From the IMG/VR virus record IMGVR_UViG_3300042934_000980, positions 156,496 to 220,495 of that record: DNA of 64,000 nt. One strand, given 5' to 3'. The notes under the pieces were generated by a model. That model searched no databases, was not told the origin of the DNA, and was given only the letters and a program-made list of their open reading frames with translations. This document shows, in pieces, positions 5,828 through 60,398 of this stretch. The position numbers were made by a program, and so were the translations under genes. Position 1 is the first letter of the stretch. The number at the start of each line of letters is the position of its first letter.

Positions 5828-5945
5828 GGTCTGAGATTCATTTAAATGTAATGCGGCGTTAAATATAATTTGCAGTGTCAGTATTTTTACCCCGATGATT
5901 TTATGTTCCATCCCCCTAAATACCTTTATCAACTGTGGAACTCCT

Positions 5946-6530
5946 ATGGCCTTTCCTAATCAGCAACTGTTTTTGGACAGGTTCATCGCTTATAACAAAA
6001 ACAGATATAAGGATGATCCTGAAATCGTTGAGGCGCTGAATGCCCTTCAGCTCGGCGCTGTCACCTTCCTCAATCCCCGTAAAGAGACCGTCGACGGGGT
6101 CACCCAGCACCTGACTGACCTGAACGTTCCAGGGGTGCTGACGGCGGTCAACCAACGTTTCATCCCAGCCGATTACCCCCTTCACGGTGTGGCTCAGCTT
6201 GTTTCTGAAAATCCACTGGTCATGGCTGACCTGCAACTGGAAATGGAAGCCGGGGTATATTGGTTGCGCACTGACGAGGACGGCAGCAAGGTCGGGGCCC
6301 TGTTGGTAGCACATGGTGAAAAGACCGAAGCCAACGTGCTCTCTTTGATCAAAGGCAAGTGCCTGTTTGATCTGCAAGACAGCGAAATCACGGTCAACGA
6401 CGACGTCACCCAAGTGGCGATCGACTCTCCGACGATCACCGGTCTTTTGGCCGTGGTGGAATCGCTGGGTGATATCACCGAGGCTGTCTACAACGGCGAC
6501 TTCGCTTTTGACGGCACCCTGACTTACTAA
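5946..6530 (+). CDS. putative virion protein, paralog of 20506..21099 and 21216..21785
   Basis: FLDRFIAYNKNRYKDD vs FVTRFVAFNLNRYKDD; start placed at MAFPN. Confidence 0.75.
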   Translation: MAFPNQQLFLDRFIAYNKNRYKDDPEIVEALNALQLGAVTFLNPRKETVDGVTQHLTDLNVPGVLTAVNQRFIPADYPLHGVAQLVSENPLVMADLQLEMEAGVYWLRTDEDGSKVGALLVAHGEKTEANVLSLIKGKCLFDLQDSEITVNDDVTQVAIDSPTITGLLAVVESLGDITEAVYNGDFAFDGTLTY

Positions 6531-6598
6531 GGACAGAAGTAGGGGGCTCCACAGGCGTAGCACCGACACACATTTATATTTCCTCAAGGGAAGTTATC

Positions 6599-9568
6599 AT
6601 GGCTGACACTGAAGTAACAGAATGGGTACAAGACGTACCCCTCATCGAAGTCGGTGAGAAGGTTAAGGGCGGCGTTGACGGCGCCGCTAACAAGAGCTCC
6701 AAAGAACTGATCAAACGCACCGACTACCTGTACGCCCAACTGCAAGCACTGGTGGTGGGTGGACTGAGTGTCCTCGGTAAGCTGGACAGTGAAGCAGAAC
6801 TGGACGCCATCGACACCACCGGGTTGGTCAAAGGCACCGCGTACTTTGTCAGCGGCTCCCTGCGAGTCTGGAACGGCGAAGAATGGACGGACTCCGGCTC
6901 TTTGCTCGGTCCTCGCGGCATCAACCTGCTCGGCACCTGGCCTGACGCCCAAGAGTTGCCAGCGATCGCTTCCAACGAAGTGGGTGACGCCTACATCTGG
7001 AAAGGCGACGTCAACATCCTGATCCCGGTGGGTGAAGGTGAAACGGCTACCCGTGAGTGGGCCAGCATCGGTCTTAAAGGCCCTCAAGGTGATTCGGCCT
7101 ACGAGCTCGCCCAAGACATCGACGGCTTCCAAGGCACCAAAGCCCAGTGGCTGGCCAGCTTGGTGGGTAAAAGCAACTACCAGATCTGGTTGGACCAAGG
7201 CAACACCGGCACCGAAGCCGACTTCTTGGCCACGCTCAAGTCAACTGAACCAGGCCCACCCGGTGAGTCGGTTAAAGGCGACCCAGGTGACCCTGCCACC
7301 CCGTTTGCGATTGAAGGCACGGTAGAGTCGGCGGATCAGCTCCCTACCCCGGGTGATGCGCGCAAAGCGTACTACATCGGCAGCCACCTGTTTGTCTGGG
7401 TTGAATCCCAGAGCAACTACGTGGACTTGGGTTCGGTAGGCGGTCTCTCTGCTTACGACCTGTGGAAGGCTGAAGGCAATACAGGCACCCTCGCTGACTT
7501 CTTCGAGGCGTACCGGTCGACAGTTCCGGGTCCAAAAGGTGACAACGGTGCCAACGTCAACGTCAAGGGTACCCTGAGCACTTCGGACAGCTTGGCGGCG
7601 TTGCAAGACCCGCAGAACCAAGACGCCTACGCGATGAGCGACACAGGTAACCTGTGGATCCTTATCGATGGGACTTGGACAGACACCGGCCCATGGCGTG
7701 GTAAGAGCAACTACGATCTCTACGTCGAGAACGGCGGTCAAGCCGATCAACCCACGTGGCTTGCCAGTCTGCAAGGCCGTGATGGGGAAGACGGGACCAA
7801 CATCCAGCTCAAGGGTATCGTTCCTTCCTACGAAAACCTGCCAACCAGTCCTGCCGAACAAGACGTGTACGCCGTACGCGACCTGAACAGCATCTTTGCC
7901 TTCATCAACGGCGGCTGGGACCTGATGGGTCAGTTCAAGGGTGAAGACGGTGAAGATGGCCAGAACGGCACCTCCATCAATGTCGTCAAGATCCTGACCG
8001 CGGATGACACCGCCATTCCAGCGGCTGCTGGTAACGCCGGCAAAGCCTACGTGGACCTCGACGGTCACATCTGGCTGTCCAACAACAGCATCTGGATCGA
8101 CGTTGGTCCTGTGGGTGCTGCAGGCCCTCAGGGTCCTCAAGGTACAGGCTTTAACCTGCGTGGTAACGTGGCCACTGCCGGTCAGCTGCCTAACACCGCC
8201 CAGGTGCAAGACGGCGATGCCTACATCACCACCATCGACAAGATGCTCTACGTGCGCGTGGAAGGTCAGTGGAACGGTCCGTTTGACATCATCGGTCCTG
8301 AAGGTCGTCAAGGTGTGCCAGGTCCTCAAGGTGCTGATGGTAAGTCCATCGCCATCATGGGTTCCTACACCACCGATGCCGACTTGAAAGCCGCTCACCC
8401 CACAGGCAACTTGGGTGAAGGCTACTTGGTGGGCACTCACCTGTGGATCTGGACGACTGCCGATGGCGGTAAGTGGATCGACGTGGGTGAAGTACGTGGT
8501 CCACAAGGGTTGCCAGGGCCTGAAGGTAAAGCCAGCACCAAACCCGGCCCTAAAGGTGAGCGTGGTACGGTGTGGATCACCTTGCCGGCCGGTCAAGATG
8601 AGCCTTCGCAAGGCTTTGCCGGTAACGTGGGTGACTGGGCGGTCTCGGACACCTTCAAGGTGTACTACCGCAGCGTCAACGGCTGGGTGTACTGGGGTCA
8701 ACTGGTAGCGGGTGATGTAAACTCGCCGCTGGAAAGCTTTGGCAAGGCTGTGCGTCTGGGTAACCAGTGGGTGGTGTTGCCGATCGATGAAGTGGAAGCA
8801 CCTCAAGACGGCAAGTTCTACGTTCGTCGTCTCAAAGCAGGCAGCAACCCTTTGGCTACGGAATGGGTCGCACTTAAGGAAGTGCCTGAAGAACTCACCG
8901 CCAAAGACGGTAAGCTCTACGGTCGGTTCTGGGATGCCGCCACCACCAAGTTCCTGTGGAAAGAAGTGGCTATCCCTTCCGGCATCGCCGATCTGGTCAC
9001 CAAAGACGGCAAGCAGTACGCCCGGGTGTTTGAATCGGGTGCGACCACGCCGATCTGGAAAGAGATCGTCACCATCGCCGACATCACGGCCAAGGACGGG
9101 AAGTACTACGCCCGCTTCTTTGCAGCCGACGGCACCGCCCCGATCTGGAAAGAAGTCCCTGTAGGGATCTCCGACCTGACCACTAAGGACGGTAAGCAGT
9201 ACGTTCGGGTCTATGAGGTGGCAGGTGCTGCACCGATCTGGAAAGAGTTTGTGCTGCCTACCATGGACAAGTACACACTCAAGATGTTGGCGGCCACCAC
9301 CATCCTCGACCTGAGCCAGGCACAGGTGTTCAGCATTGCCAATAGCTCGGCCCGCACGCTTGCGTTCATGGCCCAAACCCAACCGGCTGCTGACCGCTCG
9401 ATGACCGTGGTATTGATCATCAACGGTGCAGGTGTGATCACCTGGCCTGCCAACGTGGTCTGGACCGGCAGTACTCAACCGATCTTGGGGGCAACCACCA
9501 CCGTGGTGACCCTGTTGTGGGACGGCATTGGCGGTCGTTGGATCGGTAGCGTAGGCGCCAGCATCTAA
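6599..9568 (+). CDS. long tail fibre with collagen-like triplets and modular repeats
   Basis: 989 aa; GPQG/GPKG triplets, repeated LP..GDAY..LWVW..W.D.G and SAYELW..G..GT...WLASL modules, five DGKxYxR..W repeats. Confidence 0.85.
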   Translation: MADTEVTEWVQDVPLIEVGEKVKGGVDGAANKSSKELIKRTDYLYAQLQALVVGGLSVLGKLDSEAELDAIDTTGLVKGTAYFVSGSLRVWNGEEWTDSGSLLGPRGINLLGTWPDAQELPAIASNEVGDAYIWKGDVNILIPVGEGETATREWASIGLKGPQGDSAYELAQDIDGFQGTKAQWLASLVGKSNYQIWLDQGNTGTEADFLATLKSTEPGPPGESVKGDPGDPATPFAIEGTVESADQLPTPGDARKAYYIGSHLFVWVESQSNYVDLGSVGGLSAYDLWKAEGNTGTLADFFEAYRSTVPGPKGDNGANVNVKGTLSTSDSLAALQDPQNQDAYAMSDTGNLWILIDGTWTDTGPWRGKSNYDLYVENGGQADQPTWLASLQGRDGEDGTNIQLKGIVPSYENLPTSPAEQDVYAVRDLNSIFAFINGGWDLMGQFKGEDGEDGQNGTSINVVKILTADDTAIPAAAGNAGKAYVDLDGHIWLSNNSIWIDVGPVGAAGPQGPQGTGFNLRGNVATAGQLPNTAQVQDGDAYITTIDKMLYVRVEGQWNGPFDIIGPEGRQGVPGPQGADGKSIAIMGSYTTDADLKAAHPTGNLGEGYLVGTHLWIWTTADGGKWIDVGEVRGPQGLPGPEGKASTKPGPKGERGTVWITLPAGQDEPSQGFAGNVGDWAVSDTFKVYYRSVNGWVYWGQLVAGDVNSPLESFGKAVRLGNQWVVLPIDEVEAPQDGKFYVRRLKAGSNPLATEWVALKEVPEELTAKDGKLYGRFWDAATTKFLWKEVAIPSGIADLVTKDGKQYARVFESGATTPIWKEIVTIADITAKDGKYYARFFAADGTAPIWKEVPVGISDLTTKDGKQYVRVYEVAGAAPIWKEFVLPTMDKYTLKMLAATTILDLSQAQVFSIANSSARTLAFMAQTQPAADRSMTVVLIINGAGVITWPANVVWTGSTQPILGATTTVVTLLWDGIGGRWIGSVGASI

Positions 9569-9629
9569 GTGACCGTGCGGTAAGGTTAACGCAACTTACC
9601 GCATCACCCTTTACATTGAGGTAAGTAAC

Positions 9630-10697
9630 ATGGCTGACGAAAACGTTGTGGATAACGACGAATTGGGTGAAGAGCCGTCCAAAGAAGAACTGGACGCCGC
9701 CCCTGATGCAAACGCTGAACCCGAGGCAGATAACACCGCCGCTGAAGAAGGCACGGATGAAACGGTTGAAGGTGACGTTGAGCCTGAAGCTGAATACTCC
9801 AACGCCGTGGCAGCTGAAGCTCCGGTTGCCAGCGCGGAACTGGGTGAAGGGGAATACCCTGACCACCAAGTCCCTGCGCCGGTATCGGACAGTCCTACCC
9901 AGGAAACCACCAACGAACCCCTGCCTGACGATCACGTAGACCAAGTGGCAACCACCACTGCGGTGACGGAAGAAGAAAGCGAGGAAGCGCCTGAACCTGA
10001 GGTGCCTCAGGAACGTGTGAACGCCTCAACCTTGCTGATCGAGCTGGAATCGGGCGGGTATCCGGTGACCCTAGGTGCGATCTTCTCCAAGTACTCGGAC
10101 CGTTCGTTCCCGCAGTCCCCGTTGTTGCATGATCTTGAAGCCTTGGGTTACGCCAAGGTAGAACCCACCCCTCGCCCTGAAGGCGCCGTCGTAACTGAAG
10201 GTAAGCCGGTGGAAGAGGACGGTGTGTGGAAACGGGTCTGGGTAGCACGGGACTGGAACGACGAAGAAAAGGCCACGCAGCTGGCGGCCCAGAAGGAGCA
10301 AGCGAACCAAAAGATTCTGCAGGTTCGCAATGACGACTTCGAGATGGGCTTGGAGTTCTCCTTCCAGGACACTTCGTTCCACGCCCAGTTGCGTGACGGC
10401 GACCGCATCAACCTGATGTTTCTCAATGACCAAGCCAAAGAACGTCTGGCCGCCGGCAGTGACGAAACCGAACCGTTCCGCAGCTACGAGAATATCAGCT
10501 ACGAACTGCCTCCACAGGAGTTGCTGGATCTCACGTACGCAGCGTTGGCAGCCTACAAGGCCATCCTGCGCAACAGCTGGGCCATCAAGGACCAAGTCGA
10601 CAGAGCCACCACAGTAGCCGAGTTGCCGGAAATCCCGGGTACGTTCCTGCCTTCAAGCAGTGCCCTGAAATTGGGCGCAAGCGAAGCAACTGAGTAA
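9630..10697 (+). CDS. tail-fibre assembly/chaperone-like protein (DUF4376-like C-terminus) with long acidic N-terminal extension
   Basis: directly after the fibre; VWKRVWVARD and FHAQLRDGDRINL motifs typical of fibre-associated proteins; first ~135 aa E/D/A/P-rich. Confidence 0.65.
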   Translation: MADENVVDNDELGEEPSKEELDAAPDANAEPEADNTAAEEGTDETVEGDVEPEAEYSNAVAAEAPVASAELGEGEYPDHQVPAPVSDSPTQETTNEPLPDDHVDQVATTTAVTEEESEEAPEPEVPQERVNASTLLIELESGGYPVTLGAIFSKYSDRSFPQSPLLHDLEALGYAKVEPTPRPEGAVVTEGKPVEEDGVWKRVWVARDWNDEEKATQLAAQKEQANQKILQVRNDDFEMGLEFSFQDTSFHAQLRDGDRINLMFLNDQAKERLAAGSDETEPFRSYENISYELPPQELLDLTYAALAAYKAILRNSWAIKDQVDRATTVAELPEIPGTFLPSSSALKLGASEATE

Positions 10698-10757
10698 CAC
10701 GCACGTAGGTGGCCTCCTCAGCTGAGGAGGTCGCTTACTCTTCAAAGGAATTAACCC

Positions 10758-11489
10758 ATGCTAGAAGCAATGCTGTTAGGTGCAAGACCTACCGTCATGC
10801 CAGCACCCATCTTTCTGTTTGATATGGCGACCCAAAAAGCCAGTGGTCCGAATGGGAATATCCCGGTCACCACCACTGTTGCCGGTGGGAGCGTTGTGGA
10901 CAACGCATACCTCATTAACGACAAACCGTCCATGAGCCTGCCTGCCGCCACCAGCAACTTGGTTATTAACATAACCACGCCACTGGATCTGACAAACGGA
11001 CCGCTGCCGAATGAATTCACCTTGGAATGGTCGTTCATTCACCACAGTGGGTTGGCGGCTGCACAGTATTACGGTAGCACGTACTTTCAAAACGGTGCCG
11101 GTAACCCGGGCGCAGCGATCTATTACGGTGATACCCCGTTCAACAACTCGTTGCTCTATTCGACAACACCGGGCACTGCATCCTCAACGTGCTGGGTGCT
11201 TACCGGGGCAACCAAAACGGCTCAGCTGGCACTTCTGATCCAAGCGGCCATCGTGGTAAGGGGAGGCTTGGTGTACTTCTACCGAAACGGCACCTTGCTG
11301 CGCGTTCAACGATACGGTGAGTGGATCGAGCAGGACGCCAGTGCCAACCAAGGTACTTGGAATGCTCTGAGTCGTATCACCTTGGGGTGGTTTAACTCTA
11401 CCTTGAAGAACGCCCCGAGTCACTACGGTAACATTCGTATTTCCAACTACGCCCGCTATACCCAGAACTACGTCCCCACACCGTTCTAA
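10758..11489 (+). CDS. LamG/concanavalin-A-like virion protein
   Basis: EFTLEW, AAIVVRGGLVYFYRNG and NIRISNYARYTQNYVP match the LamG-type pattern of phage structural proteins. Confidence 0.7.
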   Translation: MLEAMLLGARPTVMPAPIFLFDMATQKASGPNGNIPVTTTVAGGSVVDNAYLINDKPSMSLPAATSNLVINITTPLDLTNGPLPNEFTLEWSFIHHSGLAAAQYYGSTYFQNGAGNPGAAIYYGDTPFNNSLLYSTTPGTASSTCWVLTGATKTAQLALLIQAAIVVRGGLVYFYRNGTLLRVQRYGEWIEQDASANQGTWNALSRITLGWFNSTLKNAPSHYGNIRISNYARYTQNYVPTPF

Positions 11490-11542
11490 GGGATAAGAGT
11501 AATTAACGGGTCACATTCCACCCCTGAGCAGCAGGACAAACC

Positions 11543-12001
11543 ATGAGTGATTTTACTCGATTCAGTGCCATTGAGCGATTGGGGTACGACGTTGAATCCA
11601 GCCGTAAGTACGGTAAGGATATCTGGAGCGTAGCGCCTGGGTATCGTTACTACATCGGATTCAAAGGGTCTACACGTTACGTTGACGTGGAAGACGGCTT
11701 TCTGACTGACGGGGCTACTATCCCGCGTTTCCTGTGGTGGTTGTTGCCACCGTTGGGCGAATACAGTCAAGCAACCAGCTTGCACGATAAACTGTGCCGG
11801 TCGTATTACATCTTGGAACTCATCAACGGCGTTGAGACCCAAGTCCCTGTCACTCGTGCTGAGATCGACGCGATCCTCAAAGAAGCCCTGGAAGTGTTGG
11901 AGGTCAAGAAATGGAAAGAGACCTGTATCATGGCTGGGGTGAATGCGTACCGACTCTTTACCAACCCCACGGAGGCCCGAGGACTGGCTGACAGTTTATA
12001 A
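11543..12001 (+). CDS. DUF1353 family protein
   Basis: GFLTDGATIPRFLWWLLPPLGEYSQATSLHD signature. Confidence 0.85.
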   Translation: MSDFTRFSAIERLGYDVESSRKYGKDIWSVAPGYRYYIGFKGSTRYVDVEDGFLTDGATIPRFLWWLLPPLGEYSQATSLHDKLCRSYYILELINGVETQVPVTRAEIDAILKEALEVLEVKKWKETCIMAGVNAYRLFTNPTEARGLADSL

Positions 12002-12039
12002 TCGGGTCGCCATCCACCCTAACCCGCAAAGGTTAAGAC

Positions 12040-12501
12040 ATGGCTGATATCAAAGAGAAACCCGACGCGTTCCCATCCGTGCCGTTGATTCAACCTGGAT
12101 GGAAGATCAAAGGCGGTGCGGAGGATGCCGCTGCCAACCTTCAAGCGGTCGCGCTGACCCAGCGTACCGCCCACCTTAAGAAGCAGCAAGATGAAATCAA
12201 AAAGTTGCTACTGGGTGGGATAAAAATTATTGGTCGTCTGGTGAATGAAGATGCACTGGACACCATCGACACCTCCAAGCTTTCCATGGGAGACGGCTAC
12301 TTTGTAGACGGTGCAATATTCCTGTGGAACGGCAAAGAGTGGGTCAGTTCGGGCTCGCTTAAAGCGGACCCGGTTGATCTGGCTGAAGGGGTCAGCACTG
12401 ACCCTGGCAACATCCTCCGTTTAGGAGAAGATGGTAAGTTGTACGTGTCCTTTGACACTACACGGGATCTTCTTTCGATTTACAATGCCGCTAAGGAGTA
12501 A
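12040..12501 (+). CDS. short fibre adaptor, N-terminus paralogous to tail fibre 6599..9568
   Basis: VPLI..G.K.KGG...AAN....L..RT..L...G...YFV.G....WNG.EW..SGSL shared with the fibre; ends DLLSIYNAAKE. Confidence 0.75.
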   Translation: MADIKEKPDAFPSVPLIQPGWKIKGGAEDAAANLQAVALTQRTAHLKKQQDEIKKLLLGGIKIIGRLVNEDALDTIDTSKLSMGDGYFVDGAIFLWNGKEWVSSGSLKADPVDLAEGVSTDPGNILRLGEDGKLYVSFDTTRDLLSIYNAAKE

Positions 12502-12506
12502 GACGT

Positions 12507-13019
12507 ATGTCACTTGCACTTCAACTGGAAGACTTGGCCGAACAGCTGGGTAAAGATTACAAAACCCTGGTGGGGTCTCAAGGTGATCTGAGCACCCTGC
12601 CCACCGAAGCCAAAGACAACGTGGTCAATGCGATCGCCGAAATCTACAGCCTGCTGGCCGATGCCGGTATCCACATTGACGACACCGCAGGTGCCGGTCA
12701 AACAAACGTGGTGCTGTCCGCTGACAAAGTGGTGGCGCTGCTGGAAGAAGCCAAGAAGGCTGTCAAAGATGACTTGCTCTCAGGCGCAAGCGAAGCTTAT
12801 GACACCTTCAAAGAGCTGCAAGACCGCTTTGAAGCTGACGAAGAAGGCGCAGCTGCCGTCACAGCTGCCTTGGGTAAGCGTGTGCGGTTTGACGCTCCCC
12901 AAACGTTGACTGCTGAAGAGCAGACCACCGCTCGTAACAACATCGGTGCGGTAGCCGCCGCTGACATCGGCGACACCGAAGTTGACTTGGTAGCCATCTA
13001 CAACGCCGCCAAGGCTTAA
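12507..13019 (+). CDS. putative fibre/decoration subunit
   Basis: L..LPT.AKDNVVNAIAEI and Q.LTAEEQTTARNNIGA motifs; ends DLVAIYNAAKA. Confidence 0.75.
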   Translation: MSLALQLEDLAEQLGKDYKTLVGSQGDLSTLPTEAKDNVVNAIAEIYSLLADAGIHIDDTAGAGQTNVVLSADKVVALLEEAKKAVKDDLLSGASEAYDTFKELQDRFEADEEGAAAVTAALGKRVRFDAPQTLTAEEQTTARNNIGAVAAADIGDTEVDLVAIYNAAKA

Positions 13020-13077
13020 GCGCTAGGAGCAAGGGCCGTGTGCGGTTTGGCACGGCCTCTTTTAAAAGGAGTAGTGT

Positions 13078-14154
13078 ATGGACCTTGTGGCGAGGGTTGT
13101 TGCGTTTGTTAAAACTGCCGCCGCGGATTTTAAATCGTTGTCTTCAGCGGTTTCATCCAAGGTAGATAAAGTCGAGGGCAAAGGACTCTCTACGGAGGAT
13201 TACACCACCACCGATAAAGGCAAGGTTGCCTCGTTAGGCGACTTGGGTGGTCAGAACTTGTTTTACAACTCAGCCATGCGGTTGAGTACCATCCCAGGCT
13301 TGGCAGACGGCTGGAAGATTGACGTACCCGGAAGCCCCGGTGCCTCAACAGTAACCTTCTCTCTGGTTCCGTCTCCTATGAACTTGGGAGAGAATGCACA
13401 GCGGCTGACTGTCGCGGGGTTGAACACCAGCACCTTGTACCGCTCGTTGATCAATGACCCTTCCTACCAACCCCCTAGGGTGTGCGAGGGGATGAACATC
13501 ACCGTCTCCACGCATGTGAAAGGCACGGCTGGACTGGGTCTTCGGATCTACGTGCAGGCCCTCAGTGCAGCAGGAGCGGTCTTGGGTACGGTTAACAGTG
13601 CGTTGTCGGCATTGGACGGTACGGTGCAACGGTTTTCCAAGTCGTACAACAACCTGCCGGTGGGTACAACGCGCATTCAGGTGGTGTATCGGATTTATGG
13701 CGGGACGACGGTCACAGCGGGGGTGGTGGACTTTACCCGTCCTCAGTTGCAGATTGGGTTGCTCTCTAGCTGGACTGAGGACACCCTCAGCCACATGACC
13801 GGTTGGATCACGTTGCCCTTGCTCAGCGGGTTCAGTGCGGTAGCCAGCCATCCCCCTCAGTACCGCATCGTCAATGATGAAGTGAAGCTTCGTGGTAAAG
13901 TGACCATGGGGGCTAAAGTGCTGTCTGGCGGTTCTTACCCGTTCGCCACGTTACCTGCTGGGTATCGCCCTGCGGGGATGACCACCGACAGTGAAGTGAT
14001 GATGGTCCCTGTGGTGTGCTCCTCCAGCGTCGGTACAGCGTGTCACTGTTCGGTTACCCGCACGGGGACTTGTTCCATTGTGCTGGGTGGTTCGTTGTCT
14101 TTGGCCTCTTCCACCTACGACCTGTCCAACGTTAGCTTCTCAACGACGGCATAA
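13078..14154 (+). CDS. putative receptor-binding fibre-tip protein
   Basis: KVDKVEGKGLSTEDYTT fibre motif, central carbohydrate-binding-like domain, C-terminal PQYRIVNDEVKLRG..FATLPAGYRP tip domain. Confidence 0.7.
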   Translation: MDLVARVVAFVKTAAADFKSLSSAVSSKVDKVEGKGLSTEDYTTTDKGKVASLGDLGGQNLFYNSAMRLSTIPGLADGWKIDVPGSPGASTVTFSLVPSPMNLGENAQRLTVAGLNTSTLYRSLINDPSYQPPRVCEGMNITVSTHVKGTAGLGLRIYVQALSAAGAVLGTVNSALSALDGTVQRFSKSYNNLPVGTTRIQVVYRIYGGTTVTAGVVDFTRPQLQIGLLSSWTEDTLSHMTGWITLPLLSGFSAVASHPPQYRIVNDEVKLRGKVTMGAKVLSGGSYPFATLPAGYRPAGMTTDSEVMMVPVVCSSSVGTACHCSVTRTGTCSIVLGGSLSLASSTYDLSNVSFSTTA

Positions 14155-14175: not shown

Positions 14176-14214
14176 ATAACCCTACCCAACCCATTACGGG
14201 TTGGGTAGGGTTAT
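14176..14214. terminator. bidirectional terminator
   Basis: perfect 17-bp stem ATAACCCTACCCAACCC/GGGTTGGGTAGGGTTAT between convergent genes. Confidence 0.85.
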
Positions 14215-22119: not shown

Positions 22120-23841
22120 TTAGTGCGTCTTGACCGCGTGCAGCTTGTCGCCCAACAGCAGGCTGCTGGCATTGGCCAAGATCTTGGCTGTTTGCAGGCC
22201 GCCCTTAAGCGCTGTGACCAACGCGAACGCAGTGTCGTACACACCCAGGTCTTGAGCTTGTCCCGTTTCACCGGTGGCCAAGTTGGTGATGTCCGGTACA
22301 TTACCTGCGTACTTTTTGAGCAGCTCTGGCAGGTCAGGTATGTACGCACCCTCGTCGCTTTGCTTGGCCAGATGCACGTACGGCACGCACACCAGCTCGG
22401 CTAGGCGTTCGAGGATCTTTGCATCCGTCTTGTCCCGGGCGAAGGTCACCGGATACAGGCTTTCCTTATTCTTGGGGGCAAGGACCACATGGTCTTGGTG
22501 ATGGCAGTGATCATAAAGATCCGACAACACCAACAATCCAGCCTTCATCAACGAGGTACCGGCGCCTGGCAGAATGCCGTTGTCCAACGCACTCTTGACC
22601 GCCTTGACGACGTCCTCGAACCGATCCAAACGCTCCTTCACGTCCGAATAGGTTTCACCGCCCACAAAGATGGTGACCAACTGGCCGCGCAGGTTACGGA
22701 TCCGGCTTTCGTTGAACTTGGCGCGTACGCTGAAACGGTCACCCATTTCGTACCCGCTCAGTTCTTGCTCGATGGCATCAGCACGCTGCTGCACGCGCAC
22801 TAAGGCATTAGCATCCAGCTCGCTCACCAACGAGCGGCTGTTGCCGACCGTGACGTGCATGTTCGGAACGTTGAACTCCGCACCCACCGCGTCTTGCAGC
22901 TGAGTGAACATCGGCACGCCAAAGATGGTGGCGATATCACCCATGATCAAGCTGCCCACCGAACCACCGGCGTTGGTGTTGATCCCCACGAAAGTTGGGC
23001 CGCCCAGGAAGGTGTTGACCATTCCACCCATGCGTGCACTGGATTTTACTTGGTTATTGATGTTGGCCATGACAGCCCCCACCTCATGCTCGATCGAGCG
23101 GGCAATGATAAGGATGTGGTCGGTCTGGCCCTTGAACTGGTCATGCAGCTTGATCAGCTCATCGGTCAGGTCCGCACCACGCCCCAGCGTACCGTCGATC
23201 ACCACCGGGATGAAGTTTTCCAGCAAAGTGTCGGCACCGTTGCCGTACTTGCTAAAGCCTGGGTTACTGAAACTCATGTTCAGTGGCAGGCCGTTGCTGT
23301 GCACCACCTTGTCTTCGCTGCTCTGGCCTTCCTTGAGCTCGATGGCAGGGTAACGATCACCCGACTGCTTGTAGATGTCGGTGATGATGGTCGACAGCTC
23401 GTGGTCGCTGTTGGAGGAGGTCAGGGCCAGCTTGAACAACCGATCGTCTTCCGGGGTAACCTGGATGGCGAGGCTGCGCAGCTTCTTGCCGATCTCACCG
23501 ATCACTTGCTCGATGAAACGCTGTTCACGAAAGCTCTTGAACTGGCTGAGCACGCTGTACAGTTCAGCGGTCAACATGACGGTGGTGGTGGTGCCATCGC
23601 CACACTCGTGGTCGGTCTTGATCGCCGCTTCAACGATCACCCGGTTAATGACCTCATCACGCGGGTCATCGAACTTGATGGACTTGGCGACCGTCACGCC
23701 ATCCTTGGTGACCTTAACCGAGGTGCCGGTGCCGATCAAAGCGAGTTTGCCATTGGGACCCATGGTGGCCACAACTGCTTGGTGTACCTTGGTCATGACG
23801 TCTTTGACCATGTCCTGGGTGTTATCCAAAGTCAGCAGCAT
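22120..23841 (-). CDS. groEL: GroEL-like phage chaperonin (EL gp146 type)
   Basis: TMGPNG, VTKDGVTVAKSI, GDGTTT, VGGETYSDVKERLDRFEDVVKAVKSALDNGILPG; no GGM tail; no GroES gene adjacent. Confidence 0.95.
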   Translation of the reverse strand: MLLTLDNTQDMVKDVMTKVHQAVVATMGPNGKLALIGTGTSVKVTKDGVTVAKSIKFDDPRDEVINRVIVEAAIKTDHECGDGTTTTVMLTAELYSVLSQFKSFREQRFIEQVIGEIGKKLRSLAIQVTPEDDRLFKLALTSSNSDHELSTIITDIYKQSGDRYPAIELKEGQSSEDKVVHSNGLPLNMSFSNPGFSKYGNGADTLLENFIPVVIDGTLGRGADLTDELIKLHDQFKGQTDHILIIARSIEHEVGAVMANINNQVKSSARMGGMVNTFLGGPTFVGINTNAGGSVGSLIMGDIATIFGVPMFTQLQDAVGAEFNVPNMHVTVGNSRSLVSELDANALVRVQQRADAIEQELSGYEMGDRFSVRAKFNESRIRNLRGQLVTIFVGGETYSDVKERLDRFEDVVKAVKSALDNGILPGAGTSLMKAGLLVLSDLYDHCHHQDHVVLAPKNKESLYPVTFARDKTDAKILERLAELVCVPYVHLAKQSDEGAYIPDLPELLKKYAGNVPDITNLATGETGQAQDLGVYDTAFALVTALKGGLQTAKILANASSLLLGDKLHAVKTH

Positions 23842-45012: not shown

Positions 45013-46389
45013 TTAGGCGGAATACATGTCGTCCCACGCGTGGTTTTTTGCACCGACATCACGCACCAATTGCTTGGCTTCGTCGATCAGCTGGATCACC
45101 TTCAGGCGCGACATCACCGACTCGGTCAGGTAGTTGGCAAAACTGCGGGTGATCGAGGTCTCAGCCACCGGGAAGCCTTCTTCGTCGATGGACATGACCC
45201 CTGAGATGACTTTGCGCACCTCCTCAATGGTGCAGTTAAGCTTAAGGCGCTGCAGGTTGTACACCGACGTCCCCAAGTCAAACTCGCGATTAGACGCACG
45301 CACCAGGAACATTTTGCTGGCGGGGGTGTCCAACGACAGGTAGTTGAACTTGTTGAGGATGTGGATGGTCTTGCCCGAGAACATCAGGTTGTTGAACACA
45401 CTGTACTTGATCAGCAGTTCAGCTTCCGAACGCACGGTGCAGCTACCCAAGTTGACGTTCTTAAGCGTCATGCGGGTGCCCGACAGAGTGGTCTTGTCCA
45501 GATAGGACCGACTAGCGCTGGTAAAGCCGCTGGCTTCGATGGTGCAGCGGTTGAACTGGCATTCCAGGTACGAACCTTGGGTGATCATCGAATTGACCAC
45601 CGTGGTGCGTTTGAATTGCGACTCCGACACAGTCGCTCGGGATTTGATCGATTCGATCTTTTTACCGCTTATTTCCCACGGCTTGTCCACTGCGTGGTCG
45701 GCAAAGAGACCGTTATACCCGTACCCGTGAGGCGTTACGACGTCTTCGGTTGCAATCAGCGCGCTGCTATTGAGCAGGTTCTTCTGGGAGATAACGTTGA
45801 TCAACGCCGCTTCCCCCACGACGGTGTCATCGGTGCTCGACGAGTTAACCAGCGCCATTATGCTTTTGCGTGCCGCTACTGAGCCACCTTCGAAACCAAA
45901 TCGGTTACGTCTATTTTCCTTGATGTTGAGTTCCACGCTCGATTCATCGTCGAGCAGGTAGTAGTTTTGGTTAACCCCCACCTTGACGCTGAACAGTTTG
46001 AATTCCCGGTCGCTTACCCGGTAGCCGTGAGTGCCTGGCAGGTGGATGGCCTCGCCCAGTTCTTTGATGTAGATGGAGGTGAGGTCGGTTTTGATGCCGG
46101 TGGCGATCGGTTCGATTTCAACGCCATCAACGGTGACAGTACCCAGCTTACGGTTCATACCACGCCCCGCTGCTTTAAGGATGCGTTCTGCGTTCTGGAT
46201 TTGGCGATCGGTTGGTGAAGCGTCAACAGGCTGGGCTTCTTCAACCTTGTGGGCCGCCCCTGGAAGCTTGATGGAGACAACGGTGTCATCCGGTTCACCG
46301 CCGAAGGCTTGCTTGACCTCAGGTGTTACAACAAGGTCTTTGACTTTGCCCGTGGTCACGGTGGCGGTTTTCTTTTCCGGTTTACTCAT
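45013..46389 (-). CDS. beta-helix/pentapeptide-like repeat protein
   Basis: 458 aa; repeats SQFKRTTVVNSMITQ..CQFNRCTIEAS; NKF and SRLKVI motifs shared with next gene. Confidence 0.7.
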   Translation of the reverse strand: MSKPEKKTATVTTGKVKDLVVTPEVKQAFGGEPDDTVVSIKLPGAAHKVEEAQPVDASPTDRQIQNAERILKAAGRGMNRKLGTVTVDGVEIEPIATGIKTDLTSIYIKELGEAIHLPGTHGYRVSDREFKLFSVKVGVNQNYYLLDDESSVELNIKENRRNRFGFEGGSVAARKSIMALVNSSSTDDTVVGEAALINVISQKNLLNSSALIATEDVVTPHGYGYNGLFADHAVDKPWEISGKKIESIKSRATVSESQFKRTTVVNSMITQGSYLECQFNRCTIEASGFTSASRSYLDKTTLSGTRMTLKNVNLGSCTVRSEAELLIKYSVFNNLMFSGKTIHILNKFNYLSLDTPASKMFLVRASNREFDLGTSVYNLQRLKLNCTIEEVRKVISGVMSIDEEGFPVAETSITRSFANYLTESVMSRLKVIQLIDEAKQLVRDVGAKNHAWDDMYSA

Positions 46390-48386
46390 TGTACTGCCCC
46401 TGTTTTGAGAATGGTGATGAGAGCGTCAATGCTCGATGCATCGGTTGCGTTGATCGTAGGAATACTGAGCTCGGTAGCCTTAAGTACTTTGCTCTGCCCC
46501 GCCTTTTCCCCGATCAACAGGTAGTTACAGTCTTTGGTCAATTTATCAACCAGCTCGATACCATGGTCGGCGAAGTAATCAATCAATTCTTCGCGCGATT
46601 GCCCCAAGGTGCCGGTGATGCACACCTTAAGTTCGTTGCTGGCCGGAACGGTGTAATCGATCTTGAGCAGATTGATCAACCCTACCGCATTGGTGACAAA
46701 GTCTTGGCTTTCAAAGCTTAGACTGATCGGGATGGCAATGCCTGCCGAAATCCCGGGAACCTTTTGCAGTTCTTGCGGTTTAGCCAGCCAGTCCAGCAAA
46801 CGCTGACCTTCGTGGTTTTGCTGCACCTGTTCCCACTTGGGGATGTGCGCTGCCAGTTTCTTGGCTCGCACCAAGTCCACGTTAGGTAAGCCCAACGCTT
46901 TGATCACCACATGCACCGGGACCGGGTTGTTCTTGATCGCTTGGATGCGCTCGTAAACTTTCTCCGGCACGGCGGTGAATGGCAGCAGTAAGACGTCCAT
47001 CGGGTATTGGATAAACTTGTTTTCCACCAACGCCGCCAACGTCACCGGACCCAGCCCGTCAATGTCCAACGTGCGCTTGTGCACCAGGTTAATGCACCGG
47101 CCGATCAGTTGCGCCGGGCAGTCGGTAAGGTTGGTGCAGATCAGGTCCGCACTTTGTTTACCCACCCGCACTTCCAATACACAGCCGCAGCTTGGGCAAT
47201 CTTCAGGGTGCTTAAGCACCGGGCCTTTACCACCCTCGATCACCCGGTTAAGCCGTGGGATAACGTCCCCGTTGCGGGTAATCCCCACCACCGACCCCTT
47301 ACGCAGCTCCAGCGCAATGAATTGCTTGTAGTTGTCCAGGTTCGCCCGGGTACAGGTCACACCCCCGATGATCACAGGACGGTAGAGAGCCACCGGAATA
47401 ACCCGCCCGGTTGCAGCTGTCGACCACACCACGTCTTCCAGCGTACTGACTTCTTCCACGTCTGGGAACTTGTACGCGATGCCCCAGTTGGGGTACCGGT
47501 TGTTGACCCCCAGCTCTTTTTGCAAGGCAAAGCTGTTGGCCCGCACCACCACCCCGTCCATGGGAACGTTTGGATGCCGTGCATTGTTCTTCATATCGTC
47601 GGGATGACGGATTTGTGGCGGAGCCATGAAGCCTTGGTTGATGCACCACGTGCGCTGCTCTTCATAGGTATCAAACCACACATCACTCATCCAGTAAGCG
47701 GCAAATTGCAACTTACCCATGATGGCTGGGTCTTGGTTATCCGGCAGGGCGCGGATCCAGCCGCTGACCGCGTTACGTGGGGTGGCCTTCTGTTTAACCG
47801 AAGTTTCGTTGTACCGGTGGAAGTCATCCAGCAGGACAAACGCTTCACCACGAATGGCGATGTCCACATCAAACAGTTCGCCGTTGTCACCTTTGAGCGT
47901 ACGGGGGATGTACGCAAAGAGTGGCAAGGCGTGCATGACGTCTTCACCAATCAACCCATCCCCTCGGGTGGCCATGGCTACCAATCTACCGCGGGTGTAG
48001 ACCAGCTCCAACGCCAACCCATCAATCTTGGCGTCTTTGAACAGTTGTTCGTCGGTCAGCTTCTTGCTTTCCTGCCACTTGTCCACCGCTTCCAGCGTCA
48101 GGGCCTTCTTAAGGCTCAGCATGGGGTGATCGAACTTTACCGCGGTCAAACCCTGGTTGGTCGGTTCATGGATCGGCACAGGCTTCTGAGCGGTCTCAAA
48201 CAGCTCGGCAATCTCGGGGTGGTTTTCAGCCAACACCTCAAAACGTTCCACCAGCTCGTCATAGACGTGGTTGGGGACCTCTTGGGTGTCTTTGTTAAAG
48301 TACAGGTCGGCGTGATGAGTGATCTGCCGGTTGAGGTCATGCATTTCCTCGTAGACAGTTTTGTATTCAGGTTTCATGGTGTTCAA
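46386..48386 (-). CDS. ligA: NAD-dependent DNA ligase
   Basis: HPMLSL, KIDG adenylation motif, ATRGDG..GEDV, AYKFP, CPSC/C..C zinc finger, HhH repeats, C-terminal BRCT. Confidence 0.95.
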   Translation of the reverse strand: MNTMKPEYKTVYEEMHDLNRQITHHADLYFNKDTQEVPNHVYDELVERFEVLAENHPEIAELFETAQKPVPIHEPTNQGLTAVKFDHPMLSLKKALTLEAVDKWQESKKLTDEQLFKDAKIDGLALELVYTRGRLVAMATRGDGLIGEDVMHALPLFAYIPRTLKGDNGELFDVDIAIRGEAFVLLDDFHRYNETSVKQKATPRNAVSGWIRALPDNQDPAIMGKLQFAAYWMSDVWFDTYEEQRTWCINQGFMAPPQIRHPDDMKNNARHPNVPMDGVVVRANSFALQKELGVNNRYPNWGIAYKFPDVEEVSTLEDVVWSTAATGRVIPVALYRPVIIGGVTCTRANLDNYKQFIALELRKGSVVGITRNGDVIPRLNRVIEGGKGPVLKHPEDCPSCGCVLEVRVGKQSADLICTNLTDCPAQLIGRCINLVHKRTLDIDGLGPVTLAALVENKFIQYPMDVLLLPFTAVPEKVYERIQAIKNNPVPVHVVIKALGLPNVDLVRAKKLAAHIPKWEQVQQNHEGQRLLDWLAKPQELQKVPGISAGIAIPISLSFESQDFVTNAVGLINLLKIDYTVPASNELKVCITGTLGQSREELIDYFADHGIELVDKLTKDCNYLLIGEKAGQSKVLKATELSIPTINATDASSIDALITILKTGAVQ

Positions 48387-52748: not shown

Positions 52749-52794
52749 GATATAGTTTCTTTCAATGAAGTGTCTACAGAATGAGGTTTGAGGT

Positions 52795-53790
52795 ATGAAC
52801 TTAATCAACCACTTGGGGGTGGGCACCGTCGCGAGTACGAAGCAGACAGGCACCCATGAGATCATGGTGTACTTGCCAGGCTTTGCTCCGCAGGCCGATG
52901 GTCGAGTGGTGGCAACTGCTAAGGAAGTCGAAAAGACCAGCCAGAATGCTTACGGGGAAGAGACCAAGAGCAAGGTCTTAACCTCCAACACCTTTCCGGC
53001 TGAATGGCGAGCGATGGGCGACACCAACCGGGTTACGTCCCCGGATGTGCGTGAAGGCTCTCAAGTCTCTATCTACCAGGTCAGTGGGCAGAACAAGTAC
53101 TACTGGACCACGTGGGGCATCAACGCGGAAACCATGCGCCTTGAAACGGTGGTGATGGGCTTTCAAGCCAACCCCGCCCAAGGTGAGGACACCCCGTTTA
53201 ACATCGACAACTTCTACACCCTGACCGTCTCCACCCACGAAGGCTTTATGGCCTTGCGCACCACCCAGCAGAACAACGAGAAGACCACCTTTGAAGTCAA
53301 GGTCGACGCCATGAACGGCAAGATCATGATCGGCGGCGGTTACCGTAACTACTTAGTGTTTGACGACGTGGCGCGTTCGTTCACCTACAAGAACGCGGAC
53401 GAGTCGGTCTTTGACATCAACAAGAAAAAGATCACCGTGGTCTGCGAAGATTCGATTACCTTCGCCCCCAAAGAAACCTTCAGCATCAAAACCACCAACT
53501 TCAATCTGCTGTGCAACAAGATTGGGATTAAGGCGGATGAGGCTGACATTCATATTGGGGAGACCCGCTGGAACGGTAACATCATTCACACCGGTGATTA
53601 CGACCAGACAGGGGACTACACCCAAGCCGGCGACACTAACCGTACTGGCAACTCTACATCCACTGGGACGGTGATCGGGGCTAAAGGGGTCTTTACCGCC
53701 CTTAACAGCCTAGACGCTCACTTCCATGGCGGTGTGCGTACTGGCGATGGCACCACCAGCCAACCGGTACCTGGTACTGGCGCAGGGTAA
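52795..53790 (+). CDS. baseplate central spike / tail tip (gpV, phiKZ gp164-like)
   Basis: 6-residue beta-helix repeats TGDYDQTGDYTQAGD and apex HFH motif; divergent from SbcC as in phiKZ-like phages. Confidence 0.8.
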   Translation: MNLINHLGVGTVASTKQTGTHEIMVYLPGFAPQADGRVVATAKEVEKTSQNAYGEETKSKVLTSNTFPAEWRAMGDTNRVTSPDVREGSQVSIYQVSGQNKYYWTTWGINAETMRLETVVMGFQANPAQGEDTPFNIDNFYTLTVSTHEGFMALRTTQQNNEKTTFEVKVDAMNGKIMIGGGYRNYLVFDDVARSFTYKNADESVFDINKKKITVVCEDSITFAPKETFSIKTTNFNLLCNKIGIKADEADIHIGETRWNGNIIHTGDYDQTGDYTQAGDTNRTGNSTSTGTVIGAKGVFTALNSLDAHFHGGVRTGDGTTSQPVPGTGAG

Positions 53791-56715: not shown

Positions 56716-56745
56716 CGTGCTACTCCATTCTTGGTGAGGGAGAAT

Positions 56746-56765
56746 CCGGGGGAATGCTCCCCCGG
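56746..56765 (-). terminator. hairpin between fibre genes
   Basis: CCGGGGGA-ATGC-TCCCCCGG. Confidence 0.6.
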
Positions 56766-56770
56766 GGTGG

Positions 56771-60328: not shown

Positions 60329-60351
60329 TGTGTTAACCTTATAAAGAAAAG

Positions 60352-60388
60352 AAGGGGAAGTGGGAGGGTTGCCCCTCCTACTCCCTTT
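60352..60388 (-). terminator. terminator hairpin
   Basis: GGGAGGG/CCCTCC core with extended purine/pyrimidine arms and T-tail on minus strand. Confidence 0.65.
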
Positions 60389-60398
60389 ACCCTTGGAT

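What the first reader, a model, noticed from the sequence alone, without database searches (positions are those of the whole stretch)
12040..14154. Possible daisy-chain accessory fibre built from complementary end-motifs
Seen: protein A (12040) has the N-terminal ~100 aa of the main fibre 6599 and ends DLLSIYNAAKE. Protein B (12507) starts with an amphipathic helix MSLALQLEDLAEQLGKDYKTL and ends DLVAIYNAAKA. Protein C (13078) starts with a similar helix MDLVARVVAFVKTAAADFKSL and ends in receptor-binding-like domains. Inference: the C-terminal DLxxIYNAAK helix binds the N-terminal helix of the next subunit, giving A-(B)n-C. That would be a virion anchor, a self-polymerising extender of variable length and a lectin tip competing for the main fibre's docking site. 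It could explain hair-like or curly fibres on some jumbo phages.
Basis: partly seen in the sequence, partly recalled or inferred. Interest (0 to 1): 0.7.

Follow-up and report, generated by a model that had tools for sequence, protein, structure and literature searches.

The report
Three-piece phage fibre with plug-in joints
Three neighbouring genes of a jumbo phage most likely build one accessory fibre (anchor, helical shaft, sugar-binding tip) whose pieces are joined by a short tail-to-head connector that recurs in hundreds of unrelated phages; the idea that the middle piece polymerises remains untested.

Summary
A (12040-12501) copies the N-terminal 107 aa of the main fibre and ends DLLSIYNAAKE. 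B (12507-13019) starts with a heptad helix and ends DLVAIYNAAKA. C (13078-14154) starts with the same kind of helix.

The pattern recurs widely. B belongs to a large family of stand-alone 160-285 aa proteins (phrog_4757), found in 222 viral contigs and 120 GenBank phages of Gordonia, Pseudomonas, Caulobacter, Ralstonia and Sinorhizobium. The usual order is an upstream protein ending in the motif, then B, then a tip protein that keeps only its first ~22 residues. Among 26 loci the tips fall into 15 unrelated families.

End type and helix type covary without exception (Y..AK with D 25/25; F..AL with E 31/31), though this follows two deep clades.

A 3:3 model of B with C(1-75) scored 0.79 against 0.00 for the best control. 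Its interface lies on B 152-170 and C 1-19.

C carries a CBM4/22-like carbohydrate-binding domain.

So the A-B-C end-to-end fibre is well supported. The (B)n polymer is untested and, if anything, disfavoured: most relatives have tight gene coupling, no locus has tandem B genes, and B lengthens by internal insertions. I found no published description of this connector.

The parts
6599..9568 (+). Main fibre (989 aa). This is context: its N-terminal ~102 aa is the virion-docking domain that A copies.
   Evidence: phrog_3904 tail fiber E 1.9e-142. 45% identity to A over 107 aa. It is the only other carrier of this domain in the genome.
12040..12501 (+). Protein A (153 aa): the anchor/adapter piece.
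   Evidence: ORF. Conserved as a 129-148 aa gene directly upstream of B in jumbo relatives L088, L089 and L090.
12040..12360 (+). A residues 1-107: copy of the main-fibre N-terminal docking domain.
   Evidence: BLASTP E 1e-22; tblastn of the genome.
12391..12498 (+). A residues 118-153: adapter C-terminal module (VSTDPGNILRLGEDGKLYV...DLLSIYNAAKE) ending in the C-terminal connector.
   Evidence: Aligns with the C-terminal ~36 aa of the small adapter proteins upstream of B in other phages.
12507..13019 (+). Protein B (170 aa): all-helical shaft segment, family phrog_4757.
   Evidence: phrog_4757 E 4.7e-45; 86 homologous clusters; AF2 model all-helical with pLDDT 74. Residues 85-137 carry the LDTLxELAxAL helix-turn-helix motif seen in Bxb1 gp4 collar fibre 9d93 (E 8e-5) and 80alpha FibU 6v8i.
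12507..12575 (+). B residues 1-23: N-terminal connector helix (MSLALQLEDLAEQLGKDYKTL). Its inferred partner is the A end.
   Evidence: Helix 3-25 in the model. The same class of helix is conserved at the N-terminus of the whole family.
12960..13016 (+). B residues 152-170: C-terminal connector (ADIGDTEVDLVAIYNAAKA).
   Evidence: Exactly these residues form the predicted interface with C. The family consensus is GDPExDFVAxYxAAKA.
13034..13063 (+). GC-rich hairpin plus T-run in the unusual 58-nt B-C spacer. It may be a weak attenuator or terminator.
   Evidence: Read from the sequence and listed by the terminator scan. The fold is not better than shuffles (z -0.53), so it is only a lead.
13078..14154 (+). 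Protein C (358 aa): the tip.
   Evidence: ORF. Orthologues at 70% and 57% identity, and a 727-aa version in L089.
13078..13143 (+). C residues 1-22: N-terminal connector helix (MDLVARVVAFVKTAAADFKSL).
   Evidence: Predicted interface residues 1-19 and 22. It is the only part of the tip conserved across phages.
13135..13242 (+). C residues ~20-55: one copy of the fibre repeat KVDKxxGKGLSxxDYT.
   Evidence: The same unit is matched up to 18 times inside giant fibre proteins.
13255..13782 (+). C residues 60-235: CBM4/22/61-like beta jelly roll, a putative carbohydrate-binding domain.
   Evidence: pLDDT about 90. Foldseek 4bj0 E 2.8e-8 with TM 0.68; also matches domains of phage tailspikes CBA120 TSP4, K2-2 TSP and Kp7 gp52.
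13783..14151 (+). C residues 236-358: C-terminal domain of unknown fold.
   Evidence: pLDDT about 30. Weak phrog_3639 'minor tail protein' match E 1.9e-6. It is shared with the 727-aa tip of L089.
14178..14212 (.). 15-bp perfect hairpin closing the + strand fibre operon against the convergent - strand genes.
   Evidence: Read from the sequence.

Best explanation
A, B and C are three separate, probably homotrimeric, segments of one accessory fibre joined end to end in the order A-B-C.

How the joint works. The last ~19 residues of the upstream trimer (G-D-x-E-x-D-[LF]-V-A-x-Y-x-A-A-K-[AE]-stop) pack against the first ~20 residues of the downstream trimer. Those first residues form a heptad helix ending in D-[IVFY]-K.

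The three pieces:
- A supplies virion attachment. It is a chimera of the main fibre's N-terminal docking domain and the C-terminal module of the small adapter proteins that precede B in other phages.
- B is an alpha-helical spacer.
- C carries one fibre repeat, a CBM-like carbohydrate-binding domain and an unmodelled distal domain. It gives the phage a second receptor specificity.

The locus is a local version of a very widespread, unnamed modular cassette of anchor, adapter, shaft and exchangeable tip.

Shown: the sequences, their conservation, the covariation and the fold of C 60-235. Supported by a model only: the B/C interface. Inferred by homology: the A/B interface, trimeric state, tail location and receptor type.
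For: 1. Recurrence.
- B-family genes are flanked in the same way in GenBank phages PMBT3, BL57, phiM12, CcrBL9, Cygsa01, SM1, Burley and Tanis.
- The same holds in 80 IMG/VR loci.
- Jumbo relatives keep A-B-C with tips of 74, 358 and 727 aa.

2. Docking-peptide signature.
- Tips align only over residues 1-22.
- In 26 Y-type loci the tip bodies form 15 unrelated BLASTP families.

3. Matching types.
- B end Y..AK goes with tip helix D in 25/25 loci, and F..AL with E in 31/31.
- Upstream end against B helix gives 20/20 and 4/4, with no cross pairs.
- Where B follows a terminase gene and has no motif-bearing upstream partner, its own helix (SLVIRVAQEFNDV) has diverged from the tip's helix.

4. Model.
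- 3xB + 3xC(1-75) scored 0.79 (three runs, 0.77-0.81) against a best control of 0.00.
- That mark was reached by 58 of 80 solved complexes and 2 of 110 mismatched pairs. The counts hold only roughly because my own alignments were used.
- Interface: B 152-170 and C 1-19, 22.

5. Uniqueness in the genome: the motifs occur only on A, B and C.

6. A residues 118-153 are homologous to adapter C-termini.

7. C 60-235 has a CBM4/22-like fold.
Against: - There is no experimental datum.
- The complex model is a prediction made with hand-built, unpaired alignments, and the tool itself says it supports binding but does not show it.
- The covariation follows two deep clades, so shared descent of adjacent genes explains part of it.
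- Trimer stoichiometry was assumed, not tested.
- The A/B joint was not modelled.
- Some relatives annotate B homologues as 'head fiber protein' or 'capsid-related', and in lambda-like contexts B lies between terminase and portal. Where family members sit on the virion is therefore unsettled.
- One relative (L088) has no tip gene after B.
Confidence: 0.72

Rival explanations
1. The connectors are promiscuous, so B trimers also dock on B trimers. That gives fibres of variable length, capped by C.
For: - In Y-type cassettes the N-helix profiles of B and of the tip are practically the same (SLExRLIALAQAIGADVKxL against SLxxRIxALAQAIGADIKAL).
- In this window the A end and the B end are 10/14 identical, while the two helices that must bind them share only 4/20 residues. 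The helix requirement therefore looks loose.
- The B-C spacer here is 58 nt with a terminator-like hairpin, which could make B more abundant than C.
Against:
- In most relatives B and the tip are 0-3 nt apart, which suggests coupled equimolar synthesis.
- None of 88 loci has two B genes.
- B length varies by internal insertion (163-285 aa; the Burley protein is 277 aa with internal repeats).
- The interface includes B 152-162, where A (KLYVSFDTTR) and B (AADIGDTEV) differ. This could encode order specificity.
- The hairpin is not statistically distinct from shuffled sequence.
Confidence: 0.13
2. The conserved termini are not a protein-protein joint. They would be by-products of gene organisation: a ribosome-binding site embedded in the last codons (AAG-GAG, AAG-GGx), translational coupling, or conserved DNA used as recombination break-points for swapping tip genes.
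For: - A's last codons AAG GAG TAA are the Shine-Dalgarno sequence of B, 8 nt before its ATG.
- Many adapters end AKG or AKE, which are AAGG-containing codons.
- Tips clearly are exchanged at exactly this boundary.
Against: - Conservation is at protein level with synonymous differences, and it spans hosts from Actinobacteria to Proteobacteria with very different G+C content.
- B keeps AAKA here although C has its own ribosome-binding site 58 nt downstream.
- F-type ends (FEAALV) have no AAGG.
- The conserved stretch covers ~19 + ~20 residues with a heptad pattern.
- The model puts precisely these residues in contact.
- A recombination role is compatible with the joint and does not replace it.
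Confidence: 0.07
3. A, B and C do form a chain, but it is not a tail fibre. It would be a head or neck (collar) fibre, as annotated for some B homologues.
For: - Gordonia phages Burley and Pherobrine annotate the B homologue as 'head fiber protein', and phiM7/phiN3 as 'capsid-related'.
- The cassette lies beside capsid genes in CcrBL9 and BL57, and between terminase and portal in lambda-like contigs.
- B's helix-turn-helix motif resembles the one described for phi29 head fibres (named as such for an F-pyocin fibre in PMC13455828).
Against: - In this genome the anchor is the N-terminal domain of a 989-aa protein of the family phrog_3904 'tail fiber protein'.
- That protein is flanked by DUF4376 and DUF1353 (phrog_1158 'tail assembly chaperone') genes.
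- In Gordonia phages the first cassette gene is LtfC-like (PF23926, E 4e-21), and LtfC is a tail-tip collar in DT57C/T5 (PMC10713586).
- The annotations seen give no evidence for the name 'head fiber'; I do not know what they rest on.
Confidence: 0.15

Closest known systems
T4 long tail fibre (gp34-gp35-gp36-gp37). Recalled from established knowledge, not tested here.
   Same: It is one fibre built from several different gene products joined end to end, with the receptor-binding piece last.
   Different: There is no sequence similarity. The T4 joints are not described as a short C-terminal helix on an N-terminal coiled coil. The T4 pieces are large and not freely exchangeable across distant phages.
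T5/DT57C lateral tail fibres: LtfC collar, LtfA and LtfB (PMC10713586)
   Same: - In Gordonia relatives the cassette starts with an LtfC-like beta-sandwich gene (PF23926).
- That gene is followed by a short beta-strand-rich adapter, analogous to the LtfA N-terminus that augments LtfC sheets and then forms a trimeric helix bundle.
- A second fibre protein (LtfB) hangs on the first.
   Different: - The window has no LtfC-like gene near A, B and C. A uses the main fibre's docking domain instead.
- LtfB branches off LtfA rather than extending it end to end.
- No IYNAAK-type motif is described there.
Receptor-binding proteins with a conserved N-terminal docking peptide and a variable body (Klebsiella KP32-type, SP6/K1-5 and CBA120 tailspike systems). 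Recalled from knowledge.
   Same: The logic is the same: a short conserved N-terminus docks a hypervariable receptor-binding protein onto a constant anchor, which lets tips be swapped.
   Different: In those systems the acceptor is a globular domain (T4 gp10-like or an adaptor protein). Here the acceptor is predicted to be the extreme C-terminus of a helical shaft, and the same joint is used twice in series.
F-type pyocin side fibre on the central-fibre coiled coil (PMC13455828; PDB 25ve)
   Same: - Fibre-to-fibre attachment occurs by helices packing into the grooves of a three-stranded coiled coil (a six-helix bundle).
- The tip of the SM1 cassette is homologous to the F2 pyocin side fibre (E 1.3e-12).
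   Different: - The attachment there is lateral, onto the middle of another fibre, and is helped by OB domains.
- The window's C has no detectable homology to PyoF13.
phi29 gp8.5 head fibre, 80alpha FibU (6v8i) and Bxb1 gp4 collar fibre (9d93)
   Same: B residues 85-137 carry the same APxxLDTLxELAxAL helix-turn-helix shaft motif (E 8e-5 to 9d93 and 0.04 to 6v8i).
   Different: Only ~50 residues match, and the terminal connectors are not part of the match. Those proteins are 350-390 aa single-chain fibres.

Membership tests
phrog_4757 / B-type shaft family (unnamed) | Full-length profile match to the family | tested here: met
   hmmscan E 4.7e-45 with B 1-169 on profile positions 9-184 of 359. 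phmmer found 86 clusters at 35-59% identity, mostly 161-185 aa.
phrog_4757 / B-type shaft family (unnamed) | Conserved N-terminal heptad helix ending D/E-[IVF]-K and a conserved C-terminal D-x-x-A-x-[YF]-x-x-[AG]-[KL] end | tested here: met
   Both are present in B and in essentially all family members listed.
Modular anchor-adapter-shaft-tip cassette (as defined here from relatives) | The gene directly upstream of B ends in the connector motif, and the gene directly downstream starts with the connector helix | tested here: met
   In the window, A ends DLLSIYNAAKE and C starts MDLVARVVAFVKTAAADFKSL. The same arrangement is seen in 24 (upstream) and 56 (downstream) of 83 non-redundant loci.
Modular anchor-adapter-shaft-tip cassette (as defined here from relatives) | A small ~100-130 aa beta-sandwich gene (LtfC-like, phrog_1084/1126 or GP4 gp80-like) precedes the adapter | tested here: not met
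   The window has DUF1353 (11543-12001) before A and no such gene. The anchor function is instead fused into A. Relatives: PF23926 E 4e-21 and PF23140 E 3e-22.
T5-type lateral tail fibre system (LtfC/LtfA) | LtfC-like collar protein and an LtfA-like N-terminus | tested here: not met
   No Pfam LtfC hit in 8 fibre-locus proteins of the window. A's N-terminus matches only the phage's own main fibre and phrog_16348.
Serially joined multi-protein fibre (T4 LTF-like in function) | A physical end-to-end joint between consecutive gene products | tested here: inconclusive
   The prediction supports a B-end/C-start interface (0.79 against a best control of 0.00; mark reached by 58/80 solved complexes and 2/110 mismatched pairs). 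There is no experiment, and the A/B joint was not modelled.
Carbohydrate-binding module, CBM4/22/61-like fold (C residues 60-235) | Beta jelly-roll fold superposable on CBMs | tested here: met
   AF2 pLDDT about 90 for residues 60-235. Foldseek 4bj0 E 2.8e-8 with TMt 0.68, and 2xom TMt 0.74.
Carbohydrate-binding module, CBM4/22/61-like fold (C residues 60-235) | Ligand-binding cleft residues and actual glycan binding | not testable with these tools
Indirect evidence is mixed.

The most novel reading that the evidence does not exclude
The two-part connector is a promiscuous, portable 'plug and socket'. It consists of a ~19-residue C-terminal motif and a ~20-residue N-terminal heptad helix, and it is shared by phages of Actinobacteria and Proteobacteria. 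Any helix-bearing trimer could dock on any motif-bearing trimer of the same type. In this jumbo phage that would allow B-on-B extension and alternative capping, giving fibres of variable length and composition set by the B:C expression ratio.
Probability: 0.13. Interest if true: 0.8.

Novelty: new variant of a known kind. Interest (0 to 1): 0.6.

Why it matters
Multi-protein fibres, and receptor-binding proteins with a conserved docking peptide, are already known. This particular joint may not be. It is a short C-terminal motif packing on the next protein's N-terminal helix, it is used twice in series, and it recurs in phages of very distant hosts. I did not find it described in the papers I could search.

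If confirmed, it would do three things:
- It would assign a role to a large family of 'hypothetical', 'head fiber' and 'capsid-related' proteins (phrog_4757 and its small neighbours).
- It would explain how tip genes are exchanged cleanly at a gene boundary.
- It would give a rule for finding receptor-binding proteins in metagenomic phages: look for the N-terminal MSLxxRIxALAQAIGADIKAL-type helix downstream of a B gene.

It would also offer a small, natural module for studying how fibre segments are ordered and how fibre length is set.

Tried and rejected
- Megablast of the whole fibre locus against GenBank phages gave no match.
- Pfam gave nothing for A, B or C.
- PDB sequence searches gave nothing meaningful for A, C or the main fibre.
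- Foldseek with the monomer model of B gave no hit below E 1. This is expected for an elongated chain taken out of a trimer.
- AF2 could not model C 236-358.
- I considered read-through or frameshift fusion of A-B-C and rejected it. A and B are in different frames, and across relatives the B-tip gap varies (-1, 0, 2, 3, 5, 8, 10, 58 nt), so no constant frame relation exists. No protein with an internal end-motif followed by the helix was found among 150 relatives of C.
- Residue-level mutual information between B ends and tip helices gave many 'significant' pairs. They are confounded by phylogeny, so I do not use them.
- The hairpin between B and C is terminator-like by pattern but folds no better than shuffled sequence.
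- Literature searches found no description of this connector. The topics were head filaments, collar fibres, LtfC, Bxb1 9D93 and six-helix bundles. The 'chain-like fibres' of podophage A1002/GP4 are dimers strung on a rope protein, which is a different thing. The library lacks many subscription papers, for example the Bxb1 structure paper, so absence is weak evidence.
I left those rows out entirely and sent the rest.
Full report
**What the window is.** The window is the last 64 kb of a 220,495-bp IMG/VR virus record rated 96% complete, so it is a jumbo phage. It has no close relative in GenBank phages at DNA level. The region 5895-14154 is a + strand island of fibre genes among - strand genes. 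In order it holds:
- a virion protein;
- the 989-aa main fibre (phrog_3904 'tail fiber', E 1.9e-142);
- a DUF4376 protein;
- a 243-aa protein;
- a DUF1353 protein (phrog_1158 'tail assembly chaperone');
- then A, B and C.

**Check of the observation.**
- A 1-107 is 45% identical to the main fibre's N-terminus (E 1e-22). No third gene in the genome has this domain.
- A and B share 10 of their last 14 residues. Synonymous differences at D, L, I, N and A codons show selection on the protein rather than recent duplication.
- A loose pattern scan of all 1550 ORFs of the genome finds the C-terminal motif only on A and B, and the N-terminal helix only on B and C.
- The two helices share few residues. 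They keep the hydrophobic positions 2, 6, 9, 13, 17 and 20 and the D-[YF]-K triplet.

**The wider pattern.**
- B is a member of phrog_4757 (E 4.7e-45).
- Homologues are abundant: 86 clusters in the protein collection, mostly 161-185 aa stand-alone proteins; 222 confirmed loci in IMG/VR; and 120 GenBank phages (57 Gordonia, 18 Pseudomonas, 12 Caulobacter, 12 Ralstonia, 7 Sinorhizobium and others).
- I read the neighbours in eight annotated phages and in 80 viral contigs. This shows a recurrent cassette of four genes.
  - The first is a ~100-130 aa beta-sandwich protein.
  - The second is a 67-160 aa adapter ending DPLAYYILAKG or DLxLLFNNALx.
  - The third is B.
  - The fourth is a tip protein of 64-773 aa beginning MSLxxRIxALAQAIGADIKAL or MSLxxxIxxLAxRIGxEIK.
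- The first cassette gene is LtfC-like in Gordonia phages (PF23926, E 4e-21) and GP4-gp80-like in CcrBL9 (PF23140, E 3e-22). In DT57C/T5, LtfC is the dodecameric tail-tip collar whose sheets are augmented by the N-terminal strands of the lateral fibre (PMC10713586).
- A second context lacks the adapter. In lambda-like head modules B follows the large terminase and is followed by a 130-aa phrog_11355 'tail fiber' protein. There B's own N-helix has diverged from the tip's helix.

**Jumbo relatives.** Three contigs of 53-242 kb carry B at 51-59% identity, each preceded by an A-like gene. That gene has the main-fibre-type N-terminus and ends AKE or AKEG.
- L089 has a 727-aa tip that shares C's distal end.
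- L090 has only a 74-aa helix-plus-repeat protein followed by a Kelch protein.
- L088 has no tip gene next to B.

A residues 118-153 align with the C-terminal ~36 residues of the adapters of the general cassette (ISxDPxNxLxLGxDxKLYV...D.L..Y..AK). A is therefore a fusion of the phage's own fibre anchor with the adapter's connector module.

**Evidence that the termini are a joint.**
1. Tips align only over their first ~22 residues. With the first 30 residues removed, the tips of 26 Y-type loci fall into 15 unrelated BLASTP families. That is the signature of a docking peptide on exchangeable receptor-binding proteins.
2. There are two connector types, and they never mix.
   - B ends of type Y..AK are followed by helices with D before [IV]K (25/25). 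Ends of type F..AL are followed by E (31/31).
   - The upstream junction behaves the same way (20/20 and 4/4).
   - This follows two deep clades, so descent contributes. I do not lean on residue-level mutual information.
3. A 3:3 prediction of full-length B with C 1-75, using my alignments, scored 0.79 (0.77-0.81 in three runs) against 0.00 for the best of three controls.
   - The tool's mark was reached by 58 of 80 solved complexes and 2 of 110 mismatched pairs in its calibration. Those counts hold only roughly here.
   - The confident contacts are B 152-162 and 164-170 with C 1-19 and 22, which are the two motifs.
   - The tool's wording applies: the model supports binding, it does not show it.

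**What the pieces are.**
- B is all-helical. Residues 85-137 carry the LDTLxELAxAL helix-turn-helix shaft motif of Bxb1 gp4 'tail collar fibers' (9d93, E 8e-5) and 80alpha FibU.
- C has four parts: the connector helix, one KVDKxxGKGLSxxDYT repeat (a unit present up to 18 times in giant fibre proteins), a CBM-like domain, and a distal domain of unknown fold.
  - The CBM-like domain (residues 60-235) is confidently modelled as a CBM4/22/61-like jelly roll. The top match is 4bj0 (E 2.8e-8, TM 0.68), with similar domains in the CBA120 TSP4, K2-2 and Kp7 fibres.
  - The distal domain is residues 236-358.

**The polymer hypothesis.** I could not test B against B.

For it:
- B and tip helices are almost indistinguishable in Y-type cassettes.
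- In this window the A and B ends are nearly identical, while the helices that bind them differ. The helix requirement seems loose.
- The unusual 58-nt B-C spacer has a terminator-like hairpin.

Against it:
- B-tip gaps of 0-3 nt elsewhere suggest coupled synthesis.
- There are no tandem B genes in 88 loci.
- B lengthens by internal insertion.
- The interface extends into residues 152-162, where A and B differ.
- The hairpin is not significant.

I put this hypothesis at about 0.13.

**Location and rivals.** Some B homologues are annotated as head or capsid proteins, and they lie near head genes. In this genome the anchor is shared with a protein of a tail-fibre family that is flanked by tail-fibre-chaperone-type genes. 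I therefore favour a tail location, but I hold the head/collar alternative at about 0.15. The terminal K-E codons of A double as B's ribosome-binding site. This may add constraint on the last two residues but cannot explain the whole motif.

**Comparison with known systems and novelty.**
- In function this resembles the serial T4 long tail fibre.
- It also resembles receptor-binding proteins with conserved N-terminal docking peptides.
- The helix-on-coiled-coil packing recalls the F-pyocin side fibre joint (PMC13455828).
- In ancestry the cassette is closest to the T5-type LtfC-anchored lateral fibres (PMC10713586). The window itself lacks an LtfC-like gene.
- I found no paper describing this connector. 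The library is incomplete.
- I rate it a new variant of a known kind, of moderate to good interest because of its breadth and its practical use for spotting receptor-binding proteins.

Noticed in passing
window 22120-23841 (-): The phage encodes a GroEL-type chaperonin (phrog_5725, E 7e-119). Only a few jumbo-phage lineages have one.
   Followed up: no
window 53845-63959 (-): Three consecutive giant virion proteins (956, 1246 and 1186 aa). The last two are paralogues (phrog_3573, E 1e-143 to 1e-158), and all three share an N-terminal phrog_2163 'virion structural protein' region.
   Followed up: no
window 46386-48386 (-) and 50283-52865 (-): A NAD-dependent DNA ligase (phrog_3869, E 2e-154) and an SbcC-like nuclease subunit (phrog_77, E 4e-74).
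   Followed up: no
L024:3002-5893 and about 45 similar IMG/VR loci: In lambda-like head modules a B homologue and a 130-aa phrog_11355 'tail fiber' protein sit between the large terminase and the portal, with no motif-bearing adapter upstream. What B's diverged N-helix (SLVIRVAQEFNDV) docks on there is unknown.
   Followed up: partly
L090:8559-9774 and L088:10915-11826: In two jumbo relatives the gene after B is only a 74-aa helix-plus-repeat protein ending in a short coiled coil, or is absent altogether. A 303-aa Kelch beta-propeller gene lies next to it, possibly an alternative tip attached by another joint.
   Followed up: no
L089:3639-7426 and L088:4836-7589: Relatives carry three or four tandem ~300-aa paralogous genes between the DUF4376 gene and A. 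Several of them start with an FN3-like 'KWxNPN...IYR' segment. This window has only the 243-aa ORF 10758-11489 and DUF1353 in that position.
   Followed up: no
L005:4061-4456 and 6148-6519 (Caulobacter phage CcrBL9 gp127, gp132): Two paralogues of the podophage GP4 fibre-I protein family (PF23140) flank the CcrBL9 cassette. The adapter gp128 (160 aa) may play the part of the 'rope' protein of GP4-type chain fibres.
   Followed up: no
window 9630-10697 (+): The DUF4376 protein downstream of the main fibre has a ~125-aa extremely acidic, low-complexity N-terminus (E/D/A/P-rich) before the conserved domain.
   Followed up: no
window 12490-12509: The last two sense codons of A (AAG GAG) followed by TAA form the Shine-Dalgarno sequence for B, 8 nt upstream of its ATG. 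This is dual coding and may help to fix the terminal K-E of A in the jumbo relatives.
   Followed up: partly
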